Shown one piece after another: positions 9,670 through 59,471 of a stretch of 64,000 nt of DNA. Location of the stretch: positions 62,001 to 126,000 of the IMG/VR virus record IMGVR_UViG_3300005613_000001, one strand, 5' to 3'. Numbering within the stretch: position 1 is the first letter of the stretch; each line of letters starts with the position of its first letter. A model generated the notes under the pieces. It was not told the origin of the DNA and did not search any database. It saw only the letters and a program-made list of their open reading frames with translations. The position numbers were made by a program, and so were the translations under genes.

Positions 9670-10040
9670 TTTGTCATGGCCTTCCTTTTTTGCCTGGCAA
9701 CAGTAGCACAGATGCCAAGAATCTTAGAGTCATTCGGATCATCGAAATCAAAATTAACACGATCTCTTAATTCATTAAGATCTTCTGCATCTTGGAAGAC
9801 GATCCCACCATCAATGGTAAGTTGAAAAGTATCGCCTTCAATAACCAGTGAAACAATGAATTCATTGAATAATGATCCTTCTGATACCTCAAAACCCCAC
9901 TCATCAACACTGTATTGTTCAGGCAAGCCATACACAGTGTAATAATTGTCAATCTGGTTTTGTAGCCATGCAAGAAAATCATAAATTGCATCATCTGTCA
10001 TTCTTTTCTCCTTAATCTTCGGCTTTACTGCCATCTCCAC
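9666..10040 (-). CDS. hypothetical protein (start probably about 10001)
   Basis: AAGGAG SD before MTDDAIY. Confidence 0.65.
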   Translation of the reverse strand: MEMAVKPKIKEKRMTDDAIYDFLAWLQNQIDNYYTVYGLPEQYSVDEWGFEVSEGSLFNEFIVSLVIEGDTFQLTIDGGIVFQDAEDLNELRDRVNFDFDDPNDSKILGICATVARQKRKAMTK

Positions 10041-11439
10041 ACATTCTCACAATTCTTGGATCAAATCTAGCCACAATTTGAACTAAATCATTTTGTGAAG
10101 CCATAACATTGTGGATGTTCTTATACGCCCCAGGAACTTCATCTGCGGCGGCGGAAAGAACTTTAACACCCTTCTTTTCCAAATCCTTCTGAACTGCTCT
10201 CCACGTATATTTATCTTTTGCCTTCTTACGAGACATTTGACGACCGGCTCCATGAGATGCTGAATACAGACTTTCAGCATTACCCTTACCTTGCACGATA
10301 AATGCAGGGGTAGCCATTGAACCGGGAATCACACCCCATACGCCAGGACCAGCAGGGGTAGCACCTTTACGATGCACAATAACATCACCCTGCTCCAAAT
10401 CGTGTAACTCTTTCCACGCAAAGTTATGGTGGTTCTCCACGCCCCAAATAATTTTGGAGCCAAGCAACTTAGAAACACCCTTATGGATTACATCGTGGTT
10501 GGCAGCAGCGAATCTTCCCATAAGTTCCATCGCTGCCCAATATTCTTGTCCTTCTTCTGTGTCAAGATCAAGCCAAGCAAGCCTTCCAAGATCTTTATAT
10601 TTTGCCGGTAGTTTAGCCTGCGCAATGCCGCTGTACTGGTTGCAGACAGCAGCACCGGGGCCTCTTGAGCCGGAATGGGTCATAAGGGCCACATAACTTC
10701 CCGCCTCAAGATTGCCTGGATGTCGAACGTGGGCATCACCATCATGAGTTATATCTTCGGCTATTGTTACAATGCCAAACTCCGCGAAGTGATTACCACT
10801 ACCGGAAGTTCCAAGTTGCTTCCAAGCCTTATCCTTCTGGTCTTCTGTTACTTTAGTTACAGACCAATCCTCATCCATAACAGGGTGATTCTTCGGCTGA
10901 TCGTATACGGCGTTCCCTTTGACACCAATACCAAACCGAGTGCCCCCTTCAAGGGATTCTTTGCATAAATTAAATTTAGAATCCAGTGCTTCAACAGGAA
11001 TATCCAACACTGAAAACTTCATTCTACATGCAATATCTACACCCACAGCAAATGGGCAGACTGCATTTTTTAGAGCCAACACACCACCAATGGGAAGTCC
11101 ATATCCCAAGTGTGCATCTGGCATAAGCGCACCGCTAACCGCATTCGGCAAGCTACAGGCTTGTTTCATTTGAGCATGAGAGCCTTCATCAATGTCTGTC
11201 CCGAAAGTTTTATATTCAACGGGTTCAGAGCGCACAAACTCCCTATCCTCAATGATTGACTTAGCCAAATCACCGTAGTAACGATCTGTAGTGTATGTCT
11301 CAGGGCTTTCTACTAAAGCTGTAAGAACACTTTTAACTTTTCTAATATCATGTTCACGTTTTGCTGTCTGGATGCAGACAATAGCATCCTTCACGCAATC
11401 TTCTGGAACACCTGCTTTTATTAATTGTCTTGAATTCAT
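10012..11439 (-). CDS. rtcB: RtcB family RNA ligase
   Basis: MPDAHLGYGLPIGG, GVDIAC, GSGNHF, HSGSRG, NHHN, HRKGA, SHGAGR, DEVPGAYK. Confidence 0.96.
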   Translation of the reverse strand: MNSRQLIKAGVPEDCVKDAIVCIQTAKREHDIRKVKSVLTALVESPETYTTDRYYGDLAKSIIEDREFVRSEPVEYKTFGTDIDEGSHAQMKQACSLPNAVSGALMPDAHLGYGLPIGGVLALKNAVCPFAVGVDIACRMKFSVLDIPVEALDSKFNLCKESLEGGTRFGIGVKGNAVYDQPKNHPVMDEDWSVTKVTEDQKDKAWKQLGTSGSGNHFAEFGIVTIAEDITHDGDAHVRHPGNLEAGSYVALMTHSGSRGPGAAVCNQYSGIAQAKLPAKYKDLGRLAWLDLDTEEGQEYWAAMELMGRFAAANHDVIHKGVSKLLGSKIIWGVENHHNFAWKELHDLEQGDVIVHRKGATPAGPGVWGVIPGSMATPAFIVQGKGNAESLYSASHGAGRQMSRKKAKDKYTWRAVQKDLEKKGVKVLSAAADEVPGAYKNIHNVMASQNDLVQIVARFDPRIVRMCGDGSKAED

Positions 11440-12668: not shown

Positions 12669-12995
12669 TTGGAGATACGCAAGTATTATCCGTCTAAGCG
12701 GGTAATCTTTGCGAGGCGGTCGGACAATGAGTTTTATCTACAATTTCCCTATTCTGTCTTAGAATGTCTTCTTCCGCCTCAACCCAGAACCTATTCGCTT
12801 CTCCATTCGAAGGACAGCCAGCTTCAAGCCACTTGTAATAAGCCGCCTCACGAATTTGATCTTCCATTCTTTAATCCTTTGTCCGATTGCTGTGATCCGG
12901 CATTCCAATTTTACCTTGCCTTCTCTTTTCCCAAACTTTTCGCATTGATTCGCTACGTTGTTTTTTTTGCTCATCAGTCAACTTTGAGCCTTTAA
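12669..12995 (+). pseudogene. inverted third paralog fragment of the E2-D-like genes
   Basis: EIRKYYPSKRVIF...FYLQFPYSV aligns with EVRIYPPCKRTLF...FFLPFPHMV; the 3' part overlaps the endonuclease gene. Confidence 0.45.
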
Positions 12996-13515
12996 GTTTA
13001 TTGCTTATTTTTTTCTTTGTGACTTCAGAGCGTTGTTTTCCATAACACCAATGCAACTCTCCGCTTGTGGCAGCAACCGCTTTTTGTATGGATTCTTCTG
13101 ACCTTTTTTTTCCATACATGGGATTATTCTTACCCAACCTTAATTCTCTTAATAATCTCTTAGTTTGCTCTGTGTGTTTTCGCCCTTTAAATGAACTAAA
13201 ACCAGAAACCCCTTGACCACCAATGGTTTGATTTGTTAGATTTTCTTTTCCAATTTTAACTATCCATTCCCTCTCTCTTTGAAGGGCTGTTTCTTCAGAT
13301 AGATTTTCTTCTAACTTCTCAACAATTGGCGACAAACCGCTAGCAGTAATTTCTCGAATGAGCCTATTCTTGGGATTGTCTTTTTCTAACATTTTAGGAC
13401 GAAGATGGAATCTCCAACGATAATTCTTCCCCTTTCCTATGTAAAATATCTTGTTATTACGAGGATCAATATACGCATAAACATAATAAATTGGTGTTAA
13501 ATCAAGTTCTTTCAT
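12871..13515 (-). CDS. GIY-YIG (LEM-3-like) homing endonuclease with NUMOD3 repeats
   Basis: YYVYAYIDP...FYIGKG; GRKHTEQTK, GKKRSEES, GKQRSEVTK repeats. Confidence 0.9.
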   Translation of the reverse strand: MKELDLTPIYYVYAYIDPRNNKIFYIGKGKNYRWRFHLRPKMLEKDNPKNRLIREITASGLSPIVEKLEENLSEETALQREREWIVKIGKENLTNQTIGGQGVSGFSSFKGRKHTEQTKRLLRELRLGKNNPMYGKKRSEESIQKAVAATSGELHWCYGKQRSEVTKKKISNKLKGSKLTDEQKKQRSESMRKVWEKRRQGKIGMPDHSNRTKD

Positions 13516-13553: not shown

Positions 13554-14009
13554 TTATTTCTTCGCCTTTCTAAGTTTATCTCTAATTTTCATCAAACGAG
13601 AACAAAACTCAGACTGTGTGAGAACTGTCTCTTTTGGATTGTTCTTCCCAATTTTATGTGTAAGAACAACATCGCCAGTATCCAGCAACGCTTTTTTGGC
13701 TTTTTCGTTCTTAAATAAAGCCTCAAAAATATCATCAAGCAACTTCTGGTATTCAGGCGATTCTCTTTTGATCGGACTTCCCTGCCACCACAATATTTGG
13801 GTTCGTTTCCAATTTTTGTTTGCGCCTCGCCTCTTAGCACCATAGCCAGTCAGTTGAAAAACTGCACATTGCATTTCGGGAGACTTAAATTTCAACCCCT
13901 GAACAACACCCTCTACAGACGCACATTCAATACCTCTTACTTTAAAGGGGCGGGGCACAAAGTTTGATAAAGCTCCAGCAGGATACGGCTTCTTCGATTT
14001 GATATCCAT
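13554..14009 (-). CDS. NADAR-superfamily protein (T4 gp30.3-like)
   Basis: PAGALSNF..RPF...CASVEG..QGLK...LWWQG...ALLDTG. Confidence 0.8.
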   Translation of the reverse strand: MDIKSKKPYPAGALSNFVPRPFKVRGIECASVEGVVQGLKFKSPEMQCAVFQLTGYGAKRRGANKNWKRTQILWWQGSPIKRESPEYQKLLDDIFEALFKNEKAKKALLDTGDVVLTHKIGKNNPKETVLTQSEFCSRLMKIRDKLRKAKK

Positions 14010-14653
14010 TACAATAACCCTTCTGTTAAATCATCAAGTCCTACATCCCAGCGTTGTTCATTAGCATATTCCCTTGCTAACTGCAATTCTTCATCAGTTA
14101 GATGAATACTAGAAAACCTCTTGTGGCATTTCAAAGCATGATCCTTATACCAAGCGAATCGACGTTTTATTTGTTCAGGTGTAAAATGTTCTAATTCGCC
14201 CTTGGCAATTCCTGTAGTTACCCAAAATTCCGCAAACCTTCGAGCATGGTGTATTCCCACACCCGCTATAACTGACTGAGGGTAATAGTATGTGGGCACC
14301 ATATCACCCACATCAAATCTCGTCTTGTAAATAGGTCTTATAATCCAACAACTAGCGACAGCATACATTCCCACTTCATCTGACAATATTTCATTGTTAC
14401 AGGGGTCTTCATCCTCAACACTACAACGGATTGTTACACCAGCCGGTTTAGCAACATCGCCTCTTATTATTATAACGTCTTGGAAGTTGATACCATTTTC
14501 TTTACAGAACGCCTCTAATGTTCCCAGCGTCCCATATTTTATACCAATATTTTGATCTTTAAATGGAAGGTCACCCTTTTCATCTTGTCCCCAAACGCGA
14601 ACTCTCTTCTGTTCTAACGGGAACAACATGAAATGAAATTTTTCAGCCCCCAT
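14009..14653 (-). CDS. hypothetical protein
   Basis: 214 aa operonic ORF. Confidence 0.7.
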   Translation of the reverse strand: MGAEKFHFMLFPLEQKRVRVWGQDEKGDLPFKDQNIGIKYGTLGTLEAFCKENGINFQDVIIIRGDVAKPAGVTIRCSVEDEDPCNNEILSDEVGMYAVASCWIIRPIYKTRFDVGDMVPTYYYPQSVIAGVGIHHARRFAEFWVTTGIAKGELEHFTPEQIKRRFAWYKDHALKCHKRFSSIHLTDEELQLAREYANEQRWDVGLDDLTEGLL

Positions 14654-15164
14654 TTTCTTCTTCGCCTAATAGTTTGAAGACTGTTGATAGGAATTCTTCG
14701 GTGAATTTCTCGATGCCAGGACATTTACTTTCTCTATTACCAGCGACATTCAGCACTTCAATTTTCTTATCTTTGATCCATGCTGCTACTTTTTCGGGAG
14801 AAGTAGGATTGTTGAAATCTACATCAATACATTCTTTTCTATTTGCCAGGATGGCACGGCGAGTACATATCTCTCCGGGGGAAGCAAAGTTGCCCGCGAA
14901 GCGTATGGTTCCGTCTGAATCTTCTACATTATACTTTGTTCGGGGTGTATAGCTTACAGAAGTAGTTTCTTTCAATCCAAAGTCAGCCAAATCAGGTTTT
15001 AGACCATTTTCGGTTTGGAACCCTTTAGGTATCCATCCACCTGTTTCTATACCGCACTTTTGGGCGGCGAGAAGACCCCCCATATCTGCCCCCGTTTGCC
15101 CGCCGCTGATTATCTTCCGTAACACCGGCAACTCCTTAGGTAAGGAAGCCCTCATGTTTAACAT
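14643..15164 (-). CDS. SLOG superfamily cpYpsA / putative molybdenum carrier-like protein
   Basis: KIISGGQTGAD...GGWIPKG...RT..NV.DSDGT...LNVAGNRES. Confidence 0.88.
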   Translation of the reverse strand: MLNMRASLPKELPVLRKIISGGQTGADMGGLLAAQKCGIETGGWIPKGFQTENGLKPDLADFGLKETTSVSYTPRTKYNVEDSDGTIRFAGNFASPGEICTRRAILANRKECIDVDFNNPTSPEKVAAWIKDKKIEVLNVAGNRESKCPGIEKFTEEFLSTVFKLLGEEENGG

Positions 15165-20111: not shown

Positions 20112-20291
20112 CTATTTGACTACTTGTTCATTACGGCGGATCGCATCGAATACTTCGCGGCGGTGAACAGGCACTTCCTTCGGAGCCTCAACCCCCAGGC
20201 GCACCTTGTCGCCACGAATTTCAACAACAACAATGGTAATGTCGTCGTTGATTACGATACTTTCATTTTTCTTCCTTGATAAAACCAGCAT
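20112..20291 (-). CDS. csrA: carbon storage regulator CsrA (canonical copy; absent from ORF track)
   Basis: hand translation: MLVLSRKKNESIVINDDITIVVVEIRGDKVRLGVEAPKEVPVHRREVFDAIRRNEQVVK; GGAGG SD. Confidence 0.95.
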   Translation of the reverse strand: MLVLSRKKNESIVINDDITIVVVEIRGDKVRLGVEAPKEVPVHRREVFDAIRRNEQVVK

Positions 20292-20955
20292 TTTTGTCTA
20301 CCTCCATAAAGAGTTCATCAACCGACTCGCTCAGATCGGTGAAATGATTCGCCGCCTCTTTAAGTCTCGGTGAGCAATCCGATCCAAAAAAAGCGACTTC
20401 TACGGTAATACCCGTATCTTGCCGAAGCCTTTTCACCGTCCTGGCATAACTGGCGTCACCGGCCACTAATATAAATGTATCATATTTCCCCATGCGACTC
20501 AAGGCGCACATATCATAAATTACATCCCCACTCACAGGTTCTACCGAAAACGACTCTTCTGCCCGAAAATCCTGTGTTTGGGGAACGCAGATGGTAAAAT
20601 AACCGCCTCGTTCTAAAGCATAATAGAACGTTTCTCTTTTTTCGGCGGCTTTTCTAGCCATGTCAAAACCGATTTTAGGAAGTTGTGGCTCGCTAAAATA
20701 AAAATAAGCGCAACCTAGATTCCTACTGTCGGCAAGATGTTCCTTCAACTTAATGTAATCCATTCTCCTTCCTCGGAGAACTGTTTTGGGCAGGTTCCGA
20801 ATCGCCTCAAAAATTTCACTATTATCGACAAAGATTGCTACATTTTCTCTAGACTGCGCAATTTCCCAAAGTTCATCTATTGTCTCATGTATCCCCTCTA
20901 ATTGGTGGGCCAATGATATTTCTTCCCGCTTTGTCAATTCAGCCATTTTCAACAA
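20263..20955 (-). CDS. NYN domain (PIN-like) protein
   Basis: AIFVDNS, D..IL.AGDASY, VEVAFF...S.RLKEAANHFTDL. Confidence 0.82.
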   Translation of the reverse strand: MLKMAELTKREEISLAHQLEGIHETIDELWEIAQSRENVAIFVDNSEIFEAIRNLPKTVLRGRRMDYIKLKEHLADSRNLGCAYFYFSEPQLPKIGFDMARKAAEKRETFYYALERGGYFTICVPQTQDFRAEESFSVEPVSGDVIYDMCALSRMGKYDTFILVAGDASYARTVKRLRQDTGITVEVAFFGSDCSPRLKEAANHFTDLSESVDELFMEVDKNAGFIKEEK

Positions 20956-39659: not shown

Positions 39660-39809
39660 ATGAGCAAGGAAAACAAAGATAAAGATATGCTGGTGCGAGT
39701 TCAGCCCACGCTCTTTGAGAAATTCAAGGAGAAGTGCGAAGCAAACTACAAGAGCATCAGCGAAGTCATCCGAGACTTCATGCAACAATACATCAAAGAG
39801 GACAAGTGA
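39660..39809 (+). CDS. ribbon-helix-helix protein (absent from ORF track)
   Basis: MSKENKDKDMLVRVQPTLFEKFKEKCEANYKSISEVIRDFMQQYIKEDK; GTGA overlap with tnpB. Confidence 0.8.
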   Translation: MSKENKDKDMLVRVQPTLFEKFKEKCEANYKSISEVIRDFMQQYIKEDK

Positions 39810-41017
39810 AACATCTATATTCTTACAAGTTCAGTCTGAAACCAACAGCACAACAAGAAGTCTTGCTTAACAAGCACTTCGGTTGTGTAAGATGGGTCTA
39901 TAACCATTTTTTGAATGAACGCATGGAAGAATACAAAGCAAACAAGCGAAGCCTCAAACGAAGTGATAACGAGAAAGAACTGCCAACGCTCAAGCAAGAA
40001 TATACTTGGTTGAAAGAAGTAGGCAGTCAATCACTGCAATACTCGGTCGAATGTTTGCAGAACGCATACAACAATTTCTTTCGCAAGTGCAAGCAGAAAG
40101 CCAAAGGCAAGAAAGGTTTTCCTCGTTTCAAGAAGCGGCATGGTAAGCAGTCCTTCAAGGTTAAGCAGAATATCCACTTAGTTGAAGGCAAGTTGATGTT
40201 TCCTAAGTTCTTGGACGGAATTGCTATTGTTCAACATCGTGAAGTAGAAGGCGAAATCCAGTTTGCTACTATCAGTAAGAACAAGGCAGGACAATACTAT
40301 GTGAGCATTACTGTTTCCAGAGAGATGCCGCAACTTAGTCCTACTGACAAAATGGTTGGCATTGACTTGAATGTAAAAGCAAACGTGGATAGTGATGGCA
40401 ACGCCGAGCCTAATCCAAGACCTGCAAAAGAATACCGAGCAAGATTGAAACTTCTCCATCAAAGAGTGAGCCGCAAAGAAAAAGGTGGAAAGAATAGAAG
40501 TAAGGCTAAGAGACAGTTAGCCAAGTTATACTTGAAAGTAACGAACAAGCGTGAAGACCATTTGCACAAACTATCGAAACGTATGATTGACGAAAACCAA
40601 GTCATTGTATGTGAAGACCTAAGTGTGGAGTCCATGCTTGCTAAAGTAAGTCCTGATGAACGCAAAGAAACTAGACATAAAGAGAAGAAACGTCATCAGG
40701 ATATACAGGATTGTGGTTGGTCAAGTTTCCTCAACAAACTCAAGTATAAGGCTGAGTGGTATGGACGAGAGTTCATCCAAGTGAGCCGATGGTTTCCAAG
40801 TTCTCAGTTGTGTAATCATTGTAGTTGGCGTTATCACGACTTGCCAAAAGATTGCAAGGAATGGACATGCTGGAATTGTTGGGAGTATAATGACCGTGAC
40901 CACAACTCAGCGAAAAACATCCTTGAAGAAGGATTGAGAATAAGAACCTCTGGAACAGAGGGAATAGCCTATCGCCCTGATATAAGACCCGCTATGAGTG
41001 GGCTATTGGTTGGATAG
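39806..41017 (+). CDS. tnpB: RNA-guided endonuclease TnpB
   Basis: HFGCVRWVYN, RuvC GIDLN / CEDL / DRDHN, CNHC..CWNC zinc finger. Confidence 0.95.
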   Translation: MKHLYSYKFSLKPTAQQEVLLNKHFGCVRWVYNHFLNERMEEYKANKRSLKRSDNEKELPTLKQEYTWLKEVGSQSLQYSVECLQNAYNNFFRKCKQKAKGKKGFPRFKKRHGKQSFKVKQNIHLVEGKLMFPKFLDGIAIVQHREVEGEIQFATISKNKAGQYYVSITVSREMPQLSPTDKMVGIDLNVKANVDSDGNAEPNPRPAKEYRARLKLLHQRVSRKEKGGKNRSKAKRQLAKLYLKVTNKREDHLHKLSKRMIDENQVIVCEDLSVESMLAKVSPDERKETRHKEKKRHQDIQDCGWSSFLNKLKYKAEWYGREFIQVSRWFPSSQLCNHCSWRYHDLPKDCKEWTCWNCWEYNDRDHNSAKNILEEGLRIRTSGTEGIAYRPDIRPAMSGLLVG

Positions 41018-46168: not shown

Positions 46169-46627
46169 TCAATCTAAAACATGAGGCGGAACTAAAAATC
46201 TACAAAGTTGTACTGCCATATTCCACCCCTCTTGTGTAGGCACAAATCGGGCGATAGGTGACGTAAATCTCTTCTTGTCAGAGAAATGAGGATCAATTAA
46301 CTTTTGATTCCGCAATTCCTCTAGAGTAATATCCTTATAGACAAGAATCTTTTCACCTTCATAATTGATGCAATCAGGGTATTTAATTCGAACTACGAGA
46401 TAGTATTCTTCACAGATATCCCCACAAGCCCAATCTTCAAGAATCTCGTAGTTAGCAGGATCAGGATTAGGTAGCTTTTGGGCAGGCTCACGATCCACTA
46501 CCACTACAAGAGGTTTTTCCTCTGTGGGGTAGCTGTCGCTGCTAAATTTTGGTCCAAGTCCCATGATAATCCCCAATATTAAAAAAGCCCACTCGCCCAT
46601 AGGGCGAGTGGGCATACAGAAGATCAC
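46169..46627 (-). CDS. conserved phage hypothetical protein
   Basis: YPDCINYEGEKILVY...DPHF...SPIARF.PT..GW. Confidence 0.65.
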   Translation of the reverse strand: MIFCMPTRPMGEWAFLILGIIMGLGPKFSSDSYPTEEKPLVVVVDREPAQKLPNPDPANYEILEDWACGDICEEYYLVVRIKYPDCINYEGEKILVYKDITLEELRNQKLIDPHFSDKKRFTSPIARFVPTQEGWNMAVQLCRFLVPPHVLD

Positions 46628-47334
46628 TTCTTCATCTTCTTTTTCTTTTTCTTTTTCTTAGACAGGATACGCGGACCAGAACGCTTGCCCTTTGTAGTTT
46701 CCTCGTCTTCTTTTTCGTCGTTCGCCAACGGAACTTCCCAGTACACTTCGCTGATGAAGTGCTTCCAGCTATTGCACGGGATATCACCCTTGAACAAACG
46801 GTACTTCGGCTTGAAAGGTTCTCTCGCCAACTTCATACCGCACTCTTCAGGGGTTTTGTCAGCTTTCTTACTGTTACAGGGCAAACATGCCAAGACACAG
46901 TTTAGCCATGTAGTTGGCCCGCCACGGCTTTTAGGAAGAACGTGGTCGATAGTTAGTTCTTCCGAGCCGGGCTTACAACCACAATACTGACAGGTGTAAC
47001 CGTCCCGCTTGTAGATCGTTCTACGCGAGAAAGTAACACGATGCGTCGGCAACTTATCATATCTACTCAACACAATTACTTCAGGAATCTTGAAGAAATC
47101 ATGCGTAGATGCGATGTAATCTTCACCCTCTTCGGGCTTTAATGCCGACCAATCATCCCAAGTGAAAGTGGTGAAGCTTTCGGGATGAACAATCAACGCT
47201 TTGGGTTGCCCGCTTGGGTGTTCTTTGGTCGGCGCATATGTTCCAAATAATAGGCTGACGGCATCCTTGATGGATACCACCCCTACCGGCGACCAATTCT
47301 TGTTTAACACTAACACCCTTCTGCGAGCTAACAT
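46624..47334 (-). CDS. HNH endonuclease (McrA/HNH_5-like)
   Basis: RVLVLN, RDGYTCQYCG, TIDHVLPKSRGG.TTW.N.V.AC..CN..K. Confidence 0.92.
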   Translation of the reverse strand: MLARRRVLVLNKNWSPVGVVSIKDAVSLLFGTYAPTKEHPSGQPKALIVHPESFTTFTWDDWSALKPEEGEDYIASTHDFFKIPEVIVLSRYDKLPTHRVTFSRRTIYKRDGYTCQYCGCKPGSEELTIDHVLPKSRGGPTTWLNCVLACLPCNSKKADKTPEECGMKLAREPFKPKYRLFKGDIPCNSWKHFISEVYWEVPLANDEKEDEETTKGKRSGPRILSKKKKKKKKMKK

Positions 47335-50785: not shown

Positions 50786-52209
50786 GTGACGTACCACGGG
50801 GCAAGCCCCGTGGCTTCTCAGTTCATTGAAGACCACTGCCACATAGGGCTGTAACCTTATCTTCTCCCTGAGCGTTAATTTGGGTGCGTCCCACCCTATT
50901 ATTTCCTAAATTCTCAATTAAACTTTGTCGATCAAAAGCAAACGCTTTTATGTTATTCGCCGCAAGCACATCCCTATCATGGAGTTTTCCACACTCTTTA
51001 CAAGTCCAAGACCTGTCTTTAAGTCGCAATTCGTGATTGATTACTCCACAACTACACATCTTGCTTGACGGATCAAACCTTCCGATTTGTAGGATGTTAG
51101 TCCCATACCACTCGCCCTTGTATCGTAGCATTTCTACGAATTTTGACCAAGAGGCAGATGATATTGAACGAGCCAACTTATGGTTTTTCAACATTCCCTG
51201 CACATTCAAATCTTCAAGGCAGACCGATTGGTTCTCTCTAATCAACCTTGTAGATAATTTGTGCAGGAAATCGTTTCTTTGATTGGTAATTCGTTCATAC
51301 AATTTAGCAAGTTTAAGCCGTGCTTTTTCTCTTCGTTTGCTTCCTTTTTCTTTTCGTTTTGTCCATCGGTCAAGTCGTTTCAACTCACCAGTGGATTTTT
51401 GTAAATGCTTTGGGTTATCAACCTTCTCGCCAGTATCCAAAGCGATGAAATGTTTTAGTCCAAGGTCAATACCCACTGCTTTATCTTGTTTGGGCTTCTT
51501 TGGTTTCTTTGGCTTATCTGGCGTTTCCACCAATACCGAAGCAAAGTATTTTCCAGTTGGTGTTCTACTGATGGTAACGGTCTTAATTTCTCCATTGAAT
51601 TTCCTGTGCAGGACTGCCTTGATATTCTTTACTTTGATAATGCTAATTGTTCCCGCCTCAAAATCAACTTTTGATTTTTGAGGGCATTGAAACGATTGCC
51701 TTCCTACTTTTTTCTTGAACTTCGGGAAGCCTTTCTTCTGTCGAAAGAACCTTGTGTAAGCATTATCAAGATTACGGAGAGCCATTTGTAGTGTTTGACT
51801 ATTGACTTCTCCTAACCATTCCAGTTCTTGTTTTAATTTCGTCAAGCGTGCGGATAATTCAATGGACGATAGTGATTTTTGTGTTTCCTGATACTCTTTG
51901 ATTCGTGTTTCTAATCCCCAATTATAAACGAACCTTGAACAGCCAAAATGCTTATTCAAAAGTGTCTTTTGCTCATTCGTGGGGTAGAGTCTGTATTTGA
52001 ATGCTTTAAGTATCATCACCTTTATATAGTGACGACACTTTCATTTCTTACGGAAAAATTCTATTTTCCGTAAAATAATTTATCCACACTATGGCGGCTT
52101 ACATCCACGACCCAAGGGCTGGCACTTTTGTTCGTCTCGCTACGCTCAACTCGCTCTCAGTGCCAGCATTTTTGCTCCGCAAAAATGTCATGGTTTTACG
52201 CCGCCGATT
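50786..52209 (-). mobile_element. IS200/IS605-family TnpB-only element
   Basis: TTAT target, AAAA + CCATGAC left-end hairpin; right end GAAG-CCACGGGGC-TT-GCCCCGTGG...TCAC; excision restores the flanking stop. Confidence 0.88.
50823..52019 (-). CDS. tnpB: RNA-guided endonuclease TnpB
   Basis: KAFKYRLYPT, RuvC GIDLG / LEDL / DRDV, CSC..CKEC. Confidence 0.96.
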   Translation of the reverse strand: MMILKAFKYRLYPTNEQKTLLNKHFGCSRFVYNWGLETRIKEYQETQKSLSSIELSARLTKLKQELEWLGEVNSQTLQMALRNLDNAYTRFFRQKKGFPKFKKKVGRQSFQCPQKSKVDFEAGTISIIKVKNIKAVLHRKFNGEIKTVTISRTPTGKYFASVLVETPDKPKKPKKPKQDKAVGIDLGLKHFIALDTGEKVDNPKHLQKSTGELKRLDRWTKRKEKGSKRREKARLKLAKLYERITNQRNDFLHKLSTRLIRENQSVCLEDLNVQGMLKNHKLARSISSASWSKFVEMLRYKGEWYGTNILQIGRFDPSSKMCSCGVINHELRLKDRSWTCKECGKLHDRDVLAANNIKAFAFDRQSLIENLGNNRVGRTQINAQGEDKVTALCGSGLQ

Positions 52210-55417: not shown

Positions 55418-55693
55418 TTAAGTTTTTGCTTTTTTCTCTGTTGGCTTAGCCTTCATATTAGCCTTTACCTCTTCAGGCTTAATTTCAGGTTTTTTGCCAT
55501 TCCCATTTCCACGCCCATAATCCGTAATATAAAACCCTGTGCCCTTAAAAATAAGTCCGCAGCCACCCGAAATAACCCGCCTCAATTTTAATTTGCCACA
55601 ATCGGGACATTTCTTTTTAGGTCGATCTTTAATACCTTGAAAAATTTCGGTGGTTTTCCCACAGGCATCGCACTCATAATCATAATGTGGCAT
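55418..55693 (-). CDS. FmdB family zinc-ribbon protein
   Basis: MPHYDYECDACG...CPDCG...IFKGTGFYITDY. Confidence 0.9.
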   Translation of the reverse strand: MPHYDYECDACGKTTEIFQGIKDRPKKKCPDCGKLKLRRVISGGCGLIFKGTGFYITDYGRGNGNGKKPEIKPEEVKANMKAKPTEKKAKT

Positions 55694-56564
55694 TTTTCTT
55701 CCTCGCTTTATACTTCCTATCAAACGAGTCAAGTTTAGCCAAATCCATATTGGCTGATTGACTCCGCATTTTCCCGCCTTCAAAAAATAACTCTAACATT
55801 CTTTCTCTGGGCAGGAGTTTAGTGGTTTTATCATCAACCCGTGGTCCCCAGCCCAATCTTGCCATAAAATTCAGCAATGCATCGGGATCATAGTGTTTGC
55901 TTGCATATTCTAATACACTCGCTGCCCCGTCGCGCTTAGATAGCTTCTTCCCCTGAAAATGTATCAATCCCACATGGGCATACTTGGGAATCGGAGCCCC
56001 AGATGGTGAAACCGCATCCAACATTTTATATAGTGCAATTTGCCTGCTTGTATTGGTAATGTGATCGTGACCCCGAATTACAAAATTAATTTCGTAATTC
56101 CAATCATCTACAACACACGACCAATGATAAGTTGCCATCCCATCTGATTTAATCAGAACAATACCTTTATTGATATGGCCTTTATCATCTTGGGAAATTG
56201 GAATTTCACCGGCAATTTCATCTACCCAAAAGTCAGGAACATCAATTGGATTTGAGATAATCGCCCCATTTTCTTCTCTAGCAAACCCTTCTCGCACCAG
56301 AGATTGAGCCATCCTTTGATATTCGTCAACATTATTACATTGTTGAATAATTGTCTCATAATCAAGACCCAACCAAAGCATACAATCAATAATGTTAGCC
56401 GCATGTTCCCATTTGCTTCTTTCCCTATCTGTATTATCCAAGCGCAGAAAGAACTTCCCCCCTGTAGAGCGGGCTGCTAACCAGTTAAAGTAGGCAGTTC
56501 GGGCTGTTCCCAGGTGGAAATCCCCCGTTGGAGAGGGGGCAATCCGGGTATTGTAGGTATTCAT
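55680..56564 (-). CDS. glutamyl-tRNA synthetase-like catalytic domain, no anticodon-binding domain
   Basis: RIAPSPTG.FHLG.ARTA.FNW, VVDD, IRG.DH, KLSKR, LLNF.ARLGW. Confidence 0.88.
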   Translation of the reverse strand: MNTYNTRIAPSPTGDFHLGTARTAYFNWLAARSTGGKFFLRLDNTDRERSKWEHAANIIDCMLWLGLDYETIIQQCNNVDEYQRMAQSLVREGFAREENGAIISNPIDVPDFWVDEIAGEIPISQDDKGHINKGIVLIKSDGMATYHWSCVVDDWNYEINFVIRGHDHITNTSRQIALYKMLDAVSPSGAPIPKYAHVGLIHFQGKKLSKRDGAASVLEYASKHYDPDALLNFMARLGWGPRVDDKTTKLLPRERMLELFFEGGKMRSQSANMDLAKLDSFDRKYKARKKNATL

Positions 56565-56582: not shown

Positions 56583-56924
56583 TCAGTATCCAGAGCTACG
56601 TTTACAAACAGCGTAACTTAGGCCAGTGGAATCATCTGTTAAGACGATATTTCCATTTTCCTGAATGAGTTTCGCTGTTCTGAAATCAAAGTCATTATCA
56701 AGTACATTTACGCACTCAATTCTAGCCCAAGGAATTATTCGCTCAACACAATCTCCTACAGCCACACTTTTTTCACCCATTGCAGATGATGAACCAAAAT
56801 GAAACGTCCTACATAGTAGTCGCACATGAGTAATGGTGTATTCTTTGAGTTTTCCGATGAATAAATGATTTTTAGCCTCTTTATAAGGTTTTACTGATCT
56901 TACTTTCCAAATTTCGTCGTACAT
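56583..56924 (-). CDS. hypothetical protein
   Basis: AGGAG SD; directly after the tRNA-like RNA. Confidence 0.7.
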   Translation of the reverse strand: MYDEIWKVRSVKPYKEAKNHLFIGKLKEYTITHVRLLCRTFHFGSSSAMGEKSVAVGDCVERIIPWARIECVNVLDNDFDFRTAKLIQENGNIVLTDDSTGLSYAVCKRSSGY

Positions 56925-56940
56925 AATTCTCCTAAATTAG

Positions 56941-57023
56941 TGGAGGCGAGGGGATTCGAACCCCTATCTCACAAGATCTCCCGAAGGTTTTAACGTGTGG
57001 CTCTCCCGTTGAGCTACGCCCCC
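56941..57023 (-). ncRNA. tRNA-like RNA with Ala-type G3:U70 acceptor and expanded anticodon loop
   Basis: GGGGGCG/CGCCTCC-A acceptor, GCTC/GAGC D-stem, AGGGG-TTCGAAT-CCCCT T-arm, 18-nt anticodon loop. Confidence 0.75.
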
Positions 57024-57027
57024 TGGA

Positions 57028-57900
57028 TTATATACCCGACAACCGACGACCAATTGTAGGATTTAATCCATCCTGGTTGCATTCCACTTCTGGTTCTGCA
57101 CCATTAAAAACAACATCTGACTGGTTAATCACCTTAGTCAAAATTGGCATTTCCACAGCAGCAATCTCACGACGAGTAATAACCAAATCAGGATTACTAC
57201 GAGCTTCATGCCGTTCGGGAAGATTACTAAGCTCTTCCGCTGTGAAAGCACGCTCTATGTGCCTTCTTTGGAAATAGCCGCCTCTTTTATCTCTATCCCG
57301 AGTATCATTCCAATTAATACCCTTCTCTGAGAAGAGTAATTCTTGGATTTCATCACAACTCTTATTCTGCAACCGAGCATGCGAAAAGTTCGCTTGACCC
57401 AGCATTTGAATTGAATTGCGCGTTGCATCTTGTTCCCTCCAAACAAGAGCATTTACTGCCTCTGCTTTGTTTGGAACACTGAAACAACGACAATCAAACT
57501 GCGGACGTTGCCCTGCCTTTGAAGGAATATAATCCTCCAAATGGCTCGCAAAATATAACGAGGCGGCTGATGCCAGTAGTGAATTTAACTTATCCACTTT
57601 ACCATCTAGGTGAATTTGCGAATTATGACTTTCAGCATACAAAACCAACGTGATTTCATCGCTTTGGGTGTATCCGATACATGCATTCGTTTCTTCAACT
57701 AGATATCGGGTTGTTCTATCCATAAGATCGGTCATTCCACGATCAAACGGACGGTCTAATCCTCTAGTGAATGTGTGAAATGCTCTCCCGTCCAGACGAA
57801 TTACCGCTGGAACTAGGGGCATTAAATAAGTTAAATTTGAACCGAAGTGTCGCTCATAGAACTTCATTCGGTCGCCTAAACTTTCATGTTTTGGCATCAT
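57028..57900 (-). CDS. tRNA(His) guanylyltransferase Thg1-like protein
   Basis: LGDRMKFYE, RLDGRAFHTFT, YTQSDEITL, FDCR, WREQDATRNSI. Confidence 0.94.
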   Translation of the reverse strand: MMPKHESLGDRMKFYERHFGSNLTYLMPLVPAVIRLDGRAFHTFTRGLDRPFDRGMTDLMDRTTRYLVEETNACIGYTQSDEITLVLYAESHNSQIHLDGKVDKLNSLLASAASLYFASHLEDYIPSKAGQRPQFDCRCFSVPNKAEAVNALVWREQDATRNSIQMLGQANFSHARLQNKSCDEIQELLFSEKGINWNDTRDRDKRGGYFQRRHIERAFTAEELSNLPERHEARSNPDLVITRREIAAVEMPILTKVINQSDVVFNGAEPEVECNQDGLNPTIGRRLSGI

Positions 57901-58640: not shown

Positions 58641-58955
58641 TCACCTTAATCTGCAAGGAAATACTTTGGTAACTCTATTCTCTGGGAGCGGACCTCTCAT
58701 TTTAAAACATTTGGGGCACATATCACAATCAAACATACTATGTATGCCGCCCCATAAAAACTTATGCCAATTGTGACCGCCTGTAATCCAACACCAAAAC
58801 TTTTGCCATTTTGTCGTTGGGGGCACAGAAGTATTGGGAAACTTCTCTCGGGCATAAAATTCTTGCGGTTCAACCATATCCAACTCCCTTAAATCGATAA
58901 AGTCATTTGGACCGCCTTTATCCAATGTGAGCCTCACGCTGCTGCTCTTAGACAT
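58641..58955 (-). CDS. hypothetical protein
   Basis: operonic ORF. Confidence 0.55.
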   Translation of the reverse strand: MSKSSSVRLTLDKGGPNDFIDLRELDMVEPQEFYAREKFPNTSVPPTTKWQKFWCWITGGHNWHKFLWGGIHSMFDCDMCPKCFKMRGPLPENRVTKVFPCRLR

Positions 58956-59188
58956 GCCATTATCTCTTGATCTATTTCCTGATTTATCTCCCGTGCCAAC
59001 AACTCCGTTAGCTCGCTTTCACAATCTAATTTGTGCCATTGTCTTAAATCCTCTGCCGAATCACGGGACCAAACAGCCCTAAGCTTTCGGTCTTTAGGAG
59101 GCGGAGGAACAGAGGCTTTAGGCGGAGTAAGAGCAGTAGGTGCTGCCACAAAGGCGGCAAACGCTTTTAAGAATGATCTACGATTCAT
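58934..59188 (-). CDS. Tat-like leader fused to T4 gp23-like major capsid fragment
   Basis: MNRRSFLK; RKLRAVWS.DSAEDL...H.LD.ESELT..LA.EI..EID.EI. Confidence 0.7.
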   Translation of the reverse strand: MNRRSFLKAFAAFVAAPTALTPPKASVPPPPKDRKLRAVWSRDSAEDLRQWHKLDCESELTELLAREINQEIDQEIMACLRAAA

Positions 59189-59471
59189 TCTCTTCTCCCT
59201 TAGAAAGACGCTTTTTTCGCTCTTGATACTTAACAACAATAATAAATATCACAAGAGCAGCAATCACCACCAAAAATGCCCAAGAGGTTGCTAGGTACTT
59301 AAAGAAAATGCCAACACCGACCCAACCGTATTGTTGGACTCCCTCATATGTAGCCCAACCCAACGCGCCAACATACACGGCAACCAGAAGAACCCAAAAA
59401 TACCAAGGCGGCGGCTCTGGATTCTTTTTCCGCTCTTCTAAGCGTTCGTTCCATTGTTTGAAAAATTTCAT
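59178..59471 (-). CDS. small membrane protein
   Basis: two or three TM segments. Confidence 0.65.
   Translation of the reverse strand: MKFFKQWNERLEERKKNPEPPPWYFWVLLVAVYVGALGWATYEGVQQYGWVGVGIFFKYLATSWAFLVVIAALVIFIIVVKYQERKKRLSKGEENES

What the first reader, a model, noticed from the sequence alone, without database searches (positions are those of the whole stretch)
56941..57023. tRNA-like RNA with alanine identity pair but no normal anticodon loop
Seen: intact acceptor (G3:U70, A73), D- and T-arms, but the anticodon stem ACACG/CTTGT closes an 18-nt loop, TTAAAACCTTCGGGAGAT, containing a CC-TTCG-GG mini-hairpin. Established: G3:U70 alone directs AlaRS charging, as in tmRNA. Inference: either a chargeable non-decoding tRNA mimic (anticodon-nuclease decoy, rescue RNA or Ala donor), or a tRNA with an 11-nt insert at 37/38 whose removal would give an AAA anticodon. 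RtcB is in the window and Thg1 lies directly upstream.
Basis: partly seen in the sequence, partly recalled or inferred. Interest (0 to 1): 0.65.

Follow-up and report, generated by a model that had tools for sequence, protein, structure and literature searches.

The report
Alanine tRNA without an anticodon
A 527-kb phage encodes an otherwise perfect alanine tRNA whose anticodon is replaced by a small capped hairpin, so it can probably be loaded with alanine but cannot read any codon; at least two unrelated large phages carry similar RNAs, which suggests an undescribed kind of non-decoding tRNA mimic.

Summary
On the minus strand (57023->56941) lies an 83-nt cloverleaf: Rfam tRNA 47.5 bits, and ARAGORN calls it 'tRNA-???'. 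It has perfect acceptor, D and T arms, all tertiary-contact bases, and the full bacterial alanine identity set (A73, G2-C71, G3.U70, G4-C69, G20). Its weak anticodon stem closes an 18-nt loop containing a CC-UUCG-GG hairpin. Three independent assemblies give the identical sequence. Cellular tRNAs with the same D and T arms are mostly normal tRNA-Ala. The same phage encodes normal tRNA-Ala(UGC) and tRNA-Ala(GGC) 15-25 kb away. The genetic code is standard, so this is not a suppressor. No true orthologs exist in any collection, so covariation cannot be tested. Two unrelated large phages do carry Ala-identity tRNA bodies with closed anticodon arms: L106 (8 bp + UUCG) and the L135 type (7 bp + UACA). 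Neither can be rescued by removing an intron. Best reading (about 0.5): a processed, AlaRS-chargeable, non-decoding tRNA mimic whose downstream role (decoy or alanine donor) is unknown. Rivals are a recently dead tRNA gene (about 0.22) and a spliced short intron (about 0.1; the resulting anticodons GAG, AAG or AAA would not match alanine identity, and there is no bulge-helix-bulge). Links to Thg1 and RtcB are circumstantial.

The parts
56941..57023 (-). Whole 83-nt tRNA-Ala-derived RNA gene (G1 at 57023, discriminator A73 at 56941); CCA not encoded
   Evidence: ARAGORN; Rfam tRNA 47.5 bits; identical in L102 and (3' part) L076
57017..57023 (-). Acceptor stem 5' strand GGGGGCG (G2, G3, G4 are identity positions)
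   Evidence: Read from sequence; 7/7 pairs with 56942-56948
56941..56948 (-). Acceptor stem 3' strand CGCCUCC plus discriminator A73 (U70 at 56944)
   Evidence: Read from sequence; G3.U70, G2-C71, G4-C69, A73 match the bacterial Ala identity set (PMC9976931)
57000..57014 (-). D arm GCUC-AACGGGA-GAGC with A14, A15, G18, G19, G20, A21
   Evidence: Rfam alignment; the same D arm occurs in 15 cellular tRNA-Ala genes
56994..56998 (-). Anticodon-stem 5' strand ACACG
   Evidence: pairs with 56971-56975 apart from the C30.U40 mismatch
56976..56993 (-). 18-nt loop UUAAAACCUUCGGGAGAU in place of the 7-nt anticodon loop; contains no NGC alanine anticodon
   Evidence: Sequence; 17-nt insertion in the Rfam alignment
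56980..56987 (-). CC-UUCG-GG mini-hairpin (C(UUCG)G tetraloop)
   Evidence: Pair probabilities 0.76-0.77; chance about 6e-4; unique in the window
56971..56975 (-). Anticodon-stem 3' strand CUUGU
56966..56970 (-). Variable loop GAGAU (G46 and U48 kept for the C13-G22-G46 and A15-U48 contacts)
   Evidence: Read from sequence; compared with cellular tRNA-Ala
56949..56965 (-). T arm AGGGG-UUCGAAU-CCCCU
   Evidence: Rfam alignment; identical T arm in cellular tRNA-Ala L090
57028..57900 (-). Context: Thg1-like 3'-5' nucleotidyltransferase gene (290 aa); its stop codon lies 4 nt before the RNA
   Evidence: Pfam Thg1 E 3e-29; PHROG tRNA-His guanylyltransferase E 6e-77
56583..56924 (-). Context: 113-aa protein starting 16 nt after the RNA (AGGAG ribosome-binding site between them); tentative Sm/LSm-like beta-barrel
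   Evidence: No family hit; model pLDDT 66.5; Sm/LSm top hits at Z 5-7.2
55680..56564 (-). Context: GluRS catalytic core without an anticodon-binding domain (294 aa)
   Evidence: Pfam tRNA-synt_1c E 7e-53; NCBIfam gltX_bact 250 bits, more than GluQRS at 142
10012..11439 (-). Context only: RtcB RNA ligase, 46 kb from the RNA
   Evidence: Pfam RtcB E 1.4e-84

Best explanation
This is a tRNA-Ala-derived gene that has been turned into an anticodon-less tRNA mimic. Shown: it has an intact tRNA-Ala body and no decoding loop. Inferred steps follow. It is transcribed with the Thg1-like / 113-aa / GluRS-core genes. It is cut out by the same 5' and 3' processing that matures the phage's other tRNAs, since it shares their A(-1) leader and C74-U75 trailer, and it is then completed with CCA. 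Host AlaRS alanylates it, because AlaRS reads only the acceptor stem and G20 and all of those determinants are present. Its anticodon arm ends in an 18-nt loop locked by a C(UUCG)G hairpin with no alanine (NGC) triplet, so it cannot pair with a codon and stays out of normal decoding. The phage's ordinary tRNA-Ala(UGC) and tRNA-Ala(GGC) do the decoding. What is used is therefore the chargeable tRNA-Ala body itself. My rough split of the ~0.5 is: a stand-in for tRNA-Ala towards host factors that recognise the acceptor/T-arm or the aminoacyl end (decoy or sink), about 0.2; an alanine carrier for a non-ribosomal transfer, about 0.15; another role, about 0.15.
For: The tRNA body is intact: Rfam 47.5 bits and an ARAGORN call; 7/7, 4/4 and 5/5 paired acceptor, D and T stems; and all tertiary-contact bases read from the sequence. 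The full bacterial Ala identity set is present (PMC9976931). Of 21 cellular tRNAs sharing its D and T arms, 15 are tRNA-Ala with 7-nt loops. Only the anticodon arm deviates, and it carries a hairpin unlikely by chance (about 6e-4). The phage has normal tRNA-Ala(UGC) and tRNA-Ala(GGC) at contig 134-144 kb. All 16 tRNA genes seen in this phage, the odd one included, have C74 and no encoded CCA; 15 of 16 have C74-U75. No promoter or terminator consensus flanks the RNA on its strand. There are independent analogues. L106 (288-kb phage, about 60% GC) has the full Ala identity and encoded CCA, an anticodon arm of 8 bp plus UUCG (-14.1 kcal/mol, 99% of the ensemble), scores 49.2 bits on the tRNA model, and lies 52 nt from a normal tRNA-Ala(UGC). 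The L135/L143/L149 lineage has Ala identity and a 7-bp plus UACA arm. Neither analogue can yield a U33-containing 7-nt loop by simple excision, so they are anticodon-less rather than intron-bearing. A phage precedent for non-translational use of aminoacyl-tRNA exists in Mu Mom (PMC13219725).
Against: There are no diverged orthologs. The only other copies are the same phage population (1 mismatch in 6.6 kb), so selection on the RNA cannot be shown. Expression, processing and charging are all untested. The anticodon stem is weak and mismatched, unlike the rigid arms of L106 and the L135 type, which could indicate decay. No aminoacyl-tRNA-dependent transferase was found among about 60 annotated window ORFs, and no target nuclease is known. 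The T stem is the same as in decoding tRNA-Ala, so there is no sign of tuning away from EF-Tu. The search patterns were biased towards Ala-type D arms and acceptor ends. Abnormal anticodon arms also occur on non-Ala bodies, so specificity to alanine identity is not demonstrated. The GNAT gene beside the L135-type RNA is not a conserved partner.
Confidence: 0.5

Rival explanations
1. It is a dead tRNA gene. A phage tRNA-Ala copy, made redundant by the normal tRNA-Ala(UGC) and tRNA-Ala(GGC), was recently inactivated by an indel or replacement in the anticodon loop. It persists because too little time has passed for the rest to decay.
For: The phage has two normal tRNA-Ala genes, so loss of this copy would cost nothing. 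The anticodon stem is weak and mismatched, and the arm is no more stable than shuffles. The RNA is a singleton lineage with no conserved orthologs or conserved neighbours. Homing endonucleases (HNH, GIY-YIG) and TnpB elements that could cause local damage are abundant in the window.
Against: Every other stem is perfect, and all tertiary and identity bases are intact. No remnant of a UGC/GGC loop is present, so this is not a simple insertion. The insert contains a C(UUCG)G hairpin (chance about 6e-4). Two unrelated phages have Ala-identity bodies with perfectly helical capped arms, which is hard to obtain by drift. The gene keeps the phage-specific processing flanks.
Confidence: 0.22
2. It is a tRNA with a short protein-spliced intron. 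An unknown phage or host endonuclease removes 11 nt from the loop, and RtcB (or another ligase) joins the halves. This would give a normal 7-nt loop UU-NNN-AU with anticodon GAG, AAG (Leu codons) or AAA (Phe codon).
For: Excising 11 nt always leaves U32 U33 NNN A37 U38. RtcB is encoded in the window, as is a NYN-domain RNase. L009, in a 323-kb phage's tRNA array that has no other tRNA-Ala in the 5 kb available, is a tRNA-Ala body in which removing about 30 nt restores UUUGCAA.
Against: There is no bulge-helix-bulge at any placement (by inspection). No splicing-endonuclease homolog turned up among the annotated ORFs. Protein-spliced tRNA introns are not described for bacteria or phages in the literature searched. 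Every possible anticodon conflicts with the complete Ala identity and would insert alanine at Leu or Phe codons. The body has a 5-nt variable loop, unlike bacterial tRNA-Leu. A34 is essentially unused for Phe. The closest analogues (L106, L135 type) cannot be repaired by any excision. RtcB is 46 kb away and is explained by tRNA repair (PMC7824862).
Confidence: 0.1
3. It is mainly an RNA-processing handle. The tRNA fold recruits RNase P and the 3' tRNA-processing nuclease to cut the polycistronic transcript between the Thg1-like gene and the downstream genes. The anticodon and charging would then be irrelevant.
For: The RNA lies 4 nt after the Thg1 stop codon and 16 nt before the next start codon, with no flanking promoter or terminator consensus. 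All tRNAs in this phage are interspersed with ORFs on the same strand. The L135-type RNA also directly precedes an RBS and an ORF. L071 has a different, very stable structured RNA at the same place after its Thg1 homolog.
Against: It does not explain why the complete Ala identity set, including G20, is retained, nor the capped arm. L106's analogue sits inside a pure tRNA array where no mRNA needs separating. Thg1 homologs in L072-L074 abut the next gene with no RNA at all.
Confidence: 0.08
4. It is a decoding oddity: a stop-codon suppressor for an alternative code, a frameshift or quadruplet decoder, or a tmRNA-like rescue RNA.
For: Huge phages often recode stop codons. ARAGORN prints a 4-base 'aaac' anticodon. 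The tmRNA model gives 35.4 bits, E 1.4e-10, because tmRNA shares the Ala-type acceptor and T arm.
Against: The code is standard. ORFs that lengthen when TAG is read as sense show no homology across the stop, and all three stop codons terminate long ORFs. An 18-nt loop cannot present a canonical anticodon. The tmRNA score is below the 47-bit gathering threshold and reflects only the acceptor and T arm. At 83 nt there is no tag ORF or pseudoknot, and a normal D stem is present.
Confidence: 0.03

Closest known systems
Canonical bacterial or phage tRNA-Ala
   Same: Cloverleaf, tertiary-contact bases, full Ala identity set (A73, G2-C71, G3.U70, G4-C69, G20), and a T stem identical to cellular tRNA-Ala genes.
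   Different: It has no 7-nt anticodon loop and no NGC anticodon. Instead it has an 18-nt loop with a UUCG-capped mini-hairpin and a weak, mismatched anticodon stem.
tRNA-like domain of tmRNA
   Same: Both have an alanine-accepting acceptor and T arm with G3.U70, no anticodon, and a helix in place of the anticodon arm. There is a sub-threshold hit to the tmRNA model.
   Different: Only 83 nt, with no mRNA-like domain, tag ORF or pseudoknots. It has a normal D stem, which tmRNA lacks and where SmpB binds. ARAGORN does not call it a tmRNA.
Non-proteinogenic tRNA-Gly of staphylococci, and aminoacyl-tRNA donors for Fem transferases, MprF and phage Mu Mom
   Same: The concept is the same: a charged tRNA used outside ribosomal decoding. 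Mom is the phage precedent (PMC13219725).
   Different: Those tRNAs keep a normal anticodon loop, and as I recall the staphylococcal ones avoid EF-Tu through T-stem changes. Here the anticodon is removed, the T stem is unchanged, and no transferase has been identified.
Archaeal or eukaryal intron-containing pre-tRNAs
   Same: An extra short segment in the anticodon loop that forms a hairpin. An RtcB-type ligase is present in the genome.
   Different: There is no bulge-helix-bulge and no splicing endonuclease was found. The host is bacterial (sigma-70-type, ClpX, FmdB and TnpB genes). The resulting anticodon would not match the identity.
Phage tRNAs that evade or neutralise host anticodon nucleases (PMC10264068, PMC11464382, PMC11555353)
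   Same: A phage-encoded tRNA with an altered anticodon loop, in a genome that also carries tRNA-repair genes.
   Different: The known cases remain decoding tRNAs with point changes in a 7-nt loop. This RNA cannot replace a cleaved tRNA in translation.
Bacterial Y RNA YrlA tRNA-like module (from memory), and engineered 'tRNA scaffolds' in which the anticodon arm is replaced
   Same: A tRNA-shaped RNA whose anticodon arm is replaced by another helix and that is handled by tRNA-processing enzymes.
   Different: As I recall, YrlA has its ends at the anticodon-arm side and is not aminoacylatable. There is no Rfam YrlA hit and no Ro/TROVE gene was seen here. tRNA scaffolds are artificial.

Membership tests
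tRNA (Rfam RF00005) | Cloverleaf scoring above the family gathering threshold | tested here: met
   47.5 bits against a gathering score of 29, E 4.8e-7; ARAGORN
Elongator tRNA-Ala | Bacterial alanine identity set: A73, G2-C71, G3.U70, G4-C69, G20 | tested here: met
   All five read from the sequence against the set given in PMC9976931
Elongator tRNA-Ala | 7-nt anticodon loop with U33 and an NGC anticodon | tested here: not met
   The loop is 18 nt (UUAAAACCUUCGGGAGAU) with no GC dinucleotide. All 15 cellular tRNA-Ala genes with the same D and T arms have 7-nt loops.
Elongator tRNA-Ala | Actual aminoacylation by AlaRS and use on the ribosome | not testable with these tools
   Needs in vitro charging and in vivo assays
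tmRNA | Alanine-type acceptor and T arm with G3.U70 | tested here: met
   Sequence; the tmRNA model aligns both of its ends
tmRNA | mRNA-like domain with tag ORF and pseudoknots; score above the gathering threshold | tested here: not met
   83 nt only; 35.4 bits against a gathering score of 47; ARAGORN finds no tmRNA; a normal D stem is present
BHB-type intron-containing tRNA | Two 3-nt bulges separated by a 4-bp helix at the splice sites | tested here: not met
   Checked by hand for the 37/38 placement and for the hairpin-centred placement, using the sequence. No such motif was found.
BHB-type intron-containing tRNA | Splicing endonuclease encoded by the virus or host | tested here: inconclusive
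   None among about 60 window ORFs scanned. Only 64 kb of the 527-kb genome was searched, and the host is unknown.
BHB-type intron-containing tRNA | The mature anticodon matches the body's identity | tested here: not met
   The possible anticodons GAG, AAG and AAA (and arithmetic) conflict with Ala identity
Group I intron in a tRNA | Catalytic intron of about 200 nt or more in the anticodon loop | tested here: not met
   The insert is 11 nt, and there is no Intron_gpI hit in the window
Suppressor tRNA of a recoded phage | A reassigned stop codon in phage genes, and a CUA, UCA or UUA anticodon in a 7-nt loop | tested here: not met
   Standard code; no 7-nt loop is possible
tRNA pseudogene | An essential element is disrupted | tested here: met
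   The anticodon loop is abolished
tRNA pseudogene | Decay spread over the molecule, or lack of conservation in relatives | tested here: inconclusive
   There is no decay outside the anticodon arm, but no diverged relatives exist to test conservation
Proposed class: anticodon-less Ala-identity tRNA mimics of large phages | Full Ala identity, an intact cloverleaf, and an anticodon arm closed by a small hairpin or tetraloop, alongside a normal tRNA-Ala in the same genome | tested here: met
   Window RNA with L134; L106 with a neighbouring tRNA-Ala(UGC). The L135 type has the capped arm, but a normal tRNA-Ala was not looked for.

The most novel reading that the evidence does not exclude
Large phages encode a previously undescribed class of anticodon-less, alanine-accepting tRNA mimics. 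These are intact tRNA-Ala bodies whose anticodon arm is sealed by a tetraloop hairpin, kept next to normal tRNA-Ala genes. They would be charged by host AlaRS but kept off the decoding pathway. Possible roles are as alanine carriers for a non-ribosomal reaction, or as decoys or sinks for host factors that attack or sense tRNA through the acceptor end.
Probability: 0.4. Interest if true: 0.85.

Novelty: new variant of a known kind. Interest (0 to 1): 0.68.

Why it matters
AlaRS is the textbook example of a synthetase that ignores the anticodon, so a tRNA-Ala body is the simplest starting point for a chargeable RNA that never decodes. tmRNA is the one widespread natural example of that idea. This finding would add a minimal, 83-nt phage version, with independent counterparts in other large phages. 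It would extend current work on phage tRNAs as counter-defence tools from 'resistant replacements' to 'non-decoding mimics'. It would also offer a directly testable RNA, by charging, EF-Tu binding, and effects on tRNA-targeting defence systems. If it is only a dead gene, it is still a useful warning for tRNA annotation in huge phages, because ARAGORN with introns labels it tRNA-Leu(GAG) and labels L106 tRNA-Arg(UCG).

Tried and rejected
1. Orthologs and covariation. The exact 5' half occurs only in the phage's own contig. Thg1 relatives at 42-71% identity have no tRNA downstream. The 113-aa protein has only a near-identical copy and one bacterial homolog in a pstB-phoU context. The metagenome scan found only the same phage population. 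Covariation analysis is therefore impossible.
2. A dedicated link to the GluRS-core gene. Its roughly 290-aa family is very large. Relatives sit near ordinary tRNAs (L077 has tRNA-Gln 4 nt downstream) or near none, and never near an abnormal one.
3. Stop-codon recoding or suppressor. Rejected by homology across in-frame stops.
4. tmRNA or two-piece tmRNA. Rejected.
5. Bulge-helix-bulge intron. No motif was found by inspection.
6. The loop as a repeated motif or antisense element. The only other match has 3 mismatches, within chance.
7. Cultured-phage counterpart. None for the window RNA or for L106's analogue.
8. L009 relatives, to test whether inserts are conserved. It is a singleton.
9. A GNAT gene as a conserved partner of the L135-type RNA. 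Its homologs lie in 7-deazaguanine clusters without a tRNA upstream.
10. The 113-aa neighbour. No sequence family was found. The fold is only tentatively Sm-like (pLDDT 66.5; Foldseek E >= 0.16; VIA Z <= 7.2, within the tool's background range), so no binding claim is made and no complex prediction was run.
11. Literature. No description of such RNAs was found in the searchable papers.
Full report
**What is there**

The finding's coordinates hold a gene on the minus strand, running from G1 at 57023 to the discriminator at 56941. ARAGORN reports it as 'tRNA-???' with a four-base 'anticodon'. The Rfam tRNA model scores it at 47.5 bits (gathering score 29, E 4.8e-7) with a 17-nt insertion in the anticodon loop.

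Reading the RNA directly gives this layout:
- Acceptor stem GGGGGCG/CGCCUCC, all seven pairs formed, with G3.U70 and discriminator A73.
- U8 and A9.
- D arm GCUC-AACGGGA-GAGC.
- C26.
- Anticodon stem ACACG/CUUGU.
- An 18-nt loop, UUAAAACCUUCGGGAGAU.
- Variable loop GAGAU.
- T arm AGGGG-UUCGAAU-CCCCU.

The usual tertiary partners are all present: U8-A14, A15-U48, G18/G19 with U55/C56, C13-G22-G46, and U54-A58.

It left out four points:
- The anticodon stem has a C30.U40 mismatch. It is so weak that the isolated arm (-3.0 kcal/mol) is no more stable than shuffled sequence, and it has a competing slipped register.
- The CC/GG-UUCG mini-hairpin is the most probable element of that arm (pair probability about 0.77).
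- CCA is not encoded.
- The thermodynamic optimum of the naked sequence (-29.1 kcal/mol) is not the cloverleaf (-24.6). This is common for unmodified tRNA sequences.

**It is real sequence**

The window is part of IMGVR_UViG_3300005613_000001, a 527,112-bp contig. Its gene content points to a bacterial host: ClpX, sigma-70 region 4 proteins, ParB, an FmdB zinc ribbon, two TnpB genes, HNH and GIY-YIG endonucleases, and a T4 Gp30.3 homolog.

Two further assemblies from other JGI datasets carry the RNA. L102 has the whole RNA, identical. L076 has the 3' 42 nt, identical, and that contig begins inside the loop. Both belong to the same phage population, differing by 1 mismatch in 6,565 bp and by 1 mismatch plus 1 gap in 2,415 bp. 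They rule out an assembly artefact but contain no divergence to analyse.

**Where the body comes from**

I scanned one genome for each of 185,579 species for tRNAs with the same D arm and T arm, allowing any anticodon-arm length. This returned 21 tRNAs. Fifteen are tRNA-Ala (13 UGC, 1 GGC, 1 CGC), and all have 7-nt loops. The closest, L090, differs from our RNA outside the anticodon arm essentially by one compensated acceptor pair, position 26, and two variable-loop bases.

The bacterial alanine identity set is A73, G2-C71, G3.U70, G4-C69 and G20, with no anticodon element (PMC9976931). All five are present. The loop contains no NGC triplet, not even a GC dinucleotide, and no remnant of a UUGCA loop. 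This is therefore not a simple insertion into tRNA-Ala(UGC). The anticodon arm as a whole is different.

**Is the loop cassette random?**

A random 18-mer of this composition contains a closed C(UUCG)G hairpin with probability about 6e-4. CCTTCGGG occurs once in 64 kb. The cassette is not a repeated motif in the window. This test is post hoc, but it argues against random filler.

**Genomic context**

The RNA starts 4 nt after the stop codon of a Thg1-like gene (57028-57900; Pfam E 3e-29, PHROG E 6e-77). It ends 16 nt before the start codon of a 113-aa gene, with an AGGAG site in between. Next comes a 294-aa GluRS catalytic core that lacks the anticodon-binding domain. No promoter or terminator consensus flanks the RNA on its strand. 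Co-transcription is inferred from this, not shown.

Four ordinary tRNAs lie nearby on the same strand: Met-CAU, Arg-CCG, Arg-UCU and Arg-CCU. RtcB is present but 46 kb away. RtcB and Thg1 are described as sporadic tRNA-repair genes of jumbo phages (PMC7824862).

The 113-aa protein has no family hit. A moderate-confidence model (pLDDT 66.5) gives consistently Sm/LSm/Hfq-like top matches, but at scores the tools themselves rate as background level (Foldseek E >= 0.16; VIA Z 5-7.2). I note this as a hint of an RNA-binding fold and nothing more.

**The search for orthologs**

This would have been the decisive comparative test, and it came up empty:
- The exact 5' half is unique in IMG/VR.
- Thg1 homologs at 42-47% identity (L002-L004) and at 63-71% identity (L071-L074) have no tRNA downstream. 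L071 instead has an unrelated, very stable 90-nt hairpin RNA at that spot.
- The 113-aa protein has only a near-identical copy and one 48%-identical bacterial homolog, which sits between pstB and phoU.
- The GluRS-core family is very large, with more than 4,600 hits, many on 100-400-kb contigs. Members sit near ordinary tRNAs or none. In L077 a normal tRNA-Gln(UUG) follows 4 nt later.

The neighbourhood is therefore a generic translation-related island, not a dedicated partnership, and covariation analysis is impossible.

**Readings that were tested and rejected**

*Recoding or suppressor.* Several ORFs near 58-64 kb looked truncated, and they lengthen if TAG is read as sense. Homology does not continue across the stops, however. 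The G3PDH-like gene begins with its own Rossmann motif right after the TAG, and the glycosyltransferase's upstream stretch contains three stops. Long ORFs end in TAA, TGA and TAG (22, 15 and 7 times). The code is standard.

*tmRNA.* The tmRNA model reaches only 35.4 bits against a 47-bit threshold, by aligning its two ends. The RNA is 83 nt, has a normal D stem, and has no tag ORF.

*Archaeal-type intron.* No bulge-helix-bulge can be drawn for the 37/38 placement or around the mini-hairpin. Any product would be an alanine-accepting tRNA reading Leu or Phe codons. Papers found on tRNA splicing describe protein-dependent splicing only in archaea and eukaryotes.

**The evidence that changes the picture**

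First, the same phage encodes ordinary tRNA-Ala(GGC) and tRNA-Ala(UGC). They sit in a dense array at contig 134-144 kb, 15-25 kb from the odd RNA (L134). Alanine decoding is already covered, and the odd RNA is a third alanine-identity gene.

All 16 tRNA genes seen in this phage, including the odd one, have C74 after the discriminator and none encodes CCA. Fifteen of the 16 continue with U. The odd RNA thus keeps the phage's own processing context.

Second, pattern scans of IMG/VR found independent analogues.
- **L106** is from a 288-kb contig of about 60% GC. It has acceptor GGGGGGA/UCCCUCC with G3.U70, A73, G20 and an encoded CCA, as most tRNAs of that phage have. Its anticodon region is CCUGA-CCCUUCGGGG-UUAGG, a continuous 8-bp helix capped by UUCG (-14.1 kcal/mol, 99% of the ensemble). 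It scores 49.2 bits on the tRNA model. It lies 52 nt from a normal tRNA-Ala(UGC) in a 20-tRNA array. ARAGORN can call it tRNA-Arg(UCG) only by accepting two stem mismatches, and it lacks the A20 arginine determinant.
- **The L135/L143/L149 lineage** is one phage (its contigs are over 98% identical), with one contig of 236 kb. It has an alanine-identity body whose eight 'loop' bases close into a 7-bp helix with a UACA tetraloop (-34.3 kcal/mol, z -4.5).

In neither analogue can any simple excision produce a U33-containing 7-nt loop. They are anticodon-less, not intron-bearing.

A fourth case is L009, from a 323-kb phage. It is a tRNA-Ala body with a roughly 30-nt insert that turns the arm into an 18-bp rod and buries a UGC. 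It sits in an array that has no other tRNA-Ala in the 5 kb available. That one could be either an intron or a mimic.

Caveats apply:
- My patterns required an Ala-typical D arm, and in two scans the UCCA end, so enrichment for alanine identity is not demonstrated.
- Abnormal anticodon arms also occur on non-Ala bodies. Some are giant-virus tRNA-Tyr genes with eukaryote-style introns.
- The UUCG shared by the window RNA and L106 was partly imposed by the search pattern. The full Ala identity and the cloverleaf of L106 were not.

**Interpretation**

The best-supported reading is a tRNA-Ala-derived, non-decoding mimic. Shown: an intact tRNA-Ala body with every AlaRS determinant, no decoding loop, normal tRNA-Ala genes elsewhere in the genome, genome-typical flanks, and independent analogues in other large phages. 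Inferred: co-transcription, RNase P and 3' processing, CCA addition, alanylation, and exclusion from decoding.

The downstream role is unknown. A decoy or sink for host factors that act on the acceptor or aminoacyl end, and an alanine donor for a non-ribosomal reaction (precedent: Mu Mom uses Gly-tRNA, PMC13219725), are the two most natural options. No transferase or target was identified. The known phage counter-defence tRNAs (PMC10264068, PMC11464382, PMC11555353) remain decoding tRNAs, so this would be a different strategy.

One candidate partner was followed up. It is a GNAT-type acetyltransferase that starts 24 nt after the L135-type RNA and carries an acetyl-CoA motif. Its homologs sit in 7-deazaguanine DNA-modification clusters with no tRNA upstream, so that adjacency is lineage-specific.

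**Main rival**

The main rival is a recently inactivated, redundant tRNA gene. The weak, mismatched anticodon stem of the window RNA, its singleton status, and the abundance of endonucleases and TnpB elements nearby all fit that reading. The perfect remainder of the molecule, the UUCG cap, and the capped arms in two unrelated phages argue against it.

I put the functional mimic at about 0.5, the dead gene at about 0.22, a spliced intron at about 0.1, a pure processing handle at about 0.08, and decoding oddities at about 0.03.

**Novelty**

tRNA-like RNAs are a known kind: the tmRNA tRNA-like domain, viral tRNA-like structures, and YrlA. I found no description of an intact alanine-identity cloverleaf with a capped anticodon arm encoded by phages alongside normal tRNA-Ala genes, neither in the review of non-canonical tRNAs (PMC7609411) nor elsewhere in the searchable library. 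I rate it a new variant of a known kind. It is directly testable by RNA-seq and an AlaRS charging assay.

Noticed in passing
L106:4539-4615 (-), contig IMGVR_UViG_3300028177_000001: Ala-identity tRNA body (G3.U70, A73, G20, encoded CCA) whose anticodon arm is an 8-bp helix capped by UUCG. It lies 52 nt from a normal tRNA-Ala(UGC) in a 20-tRNA array. ARAGORN mislabels it tRNA-Arg(UCG).
   Followed up: yes
L135:7235-7309 (-), L143:11310-11384 (+), L149:11755-11829 (-): One phage lineage with an Ala-identity tRNA body whose arm folds as a 7-bp helix plus a UACA tetraloop. A TATAAT-like box lies just upstream. A 245-aa GNAT-type protein (RRQGIGTAL motif) starts 24 nt downstream. That protein's homologs lie in QueC/FolE/QueF 7-deazaguanine clusters without any tRNA.
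   Followed up: partly
L009:2161-2263 (+), 323-kb phage contig: tRNA-Ala body in which a roughly 30-nt insert converts the anticodon arm into an 18-bp rod that buries a UGC (-52 kcal/mol, z -5.3). It sits in a 13-gene tRNA array with no other tRNA-Ala in the 5 kb available. It could be a short intron or another non-decoding mimic, and it has no relatives in IMG/VR.
   Followed up: partly
L134 (same phage, contig 134092-144507): Dense tRNA array: Gly-CCC, Ala-GGC, Ala-UGC, five Val genes, Gln-CUG, Arg-UCG, Arg-ACG and Arg-UCU. Together with the window, the phage has at least six tRNA-Arg genes covering five anticodons. All 16 tRNA genes seen carry C74 but no CCA.
   Followed up: partly
window 55680-56564 (-): A 294-aa GluRS catalytic core without an anticodon-binding domain. 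It scores closer to bacterial GluRS than to GluQRS. It belongs to a very large family of roughly 290-aa proteins (more than 4,600 hits), many on 100-400-kb contigs. In L077 a tRNA-Gln(UUG) follows 4 nt downstream.
   Followed up: partly
L071:4856-4962 (+): Directly after a 70%-identical Thg1 homolog lies a roughly 90-nt, very stable branched hairpin RNA (-39.9 kcal/mol, z -5.8). It contains a D-arm-like GUAGCUC...GAGC, but neither ARAGORN nor Rfam recognises it as a tRNA.
   Followed up: partly
window 56583-56924 (-): A 113-aa protein just downstream of the RNA has no family hit. Its only distant homolog (48% identity) sits between pstB and phoU in a bacterial contig (L075). The predicted fold is tentatively Sm/LSm/Hfq-like.
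   Followed up: partly
window 39734-41017 (+) and 50823-52019 (-); 46624-47334 (-); 12871-13515 (-): Two TnpB (IS605 OrfB) genes, an HNH endonuclease next to tRNA-Met, and a GIY-YIG/NUMOD3 homing endonuclease. The phage genome carries many mobile nuclease genes around its tRNA region.
   Followed up: no
window 20263-20955 (-); 14643-15164 (-); 13554-14009 (-): A NYN-domain (PIN-like) ribonuclease, a circularly permuted YpsA SLOG protein and a T4 Gp30.3 homolog lie near RtcB (10012-11439).
   Followed up: no
window 58934-59239 (-): A 101-aa ORF matches only residues 147-198 of the T4 Gp23 major capsid protein model (E 1.5e-11). It lies among several short overlapping ORFs in different frames and may be a gene fragment.
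   Followed up: no
whole window: CTTCGG occurs 48 times on both strands, against about 20 expected from base composition.
   Followed up: no
L087 (uncultured beta-proteobacterium MAG), minus strand: The only cellular hit with an enlarged loop: a tRNA-Val-like gene with a 10-nt anticodon loop (75 nt).
   Followed up: no
L003:8337-8638 (+): A sub-threshold group I intron match (33.6 bits against a gathering score of 50) lies about 3.6 kb downstream of a Thg1 homolog in a 138-kb viral contig.
   Followed up: no
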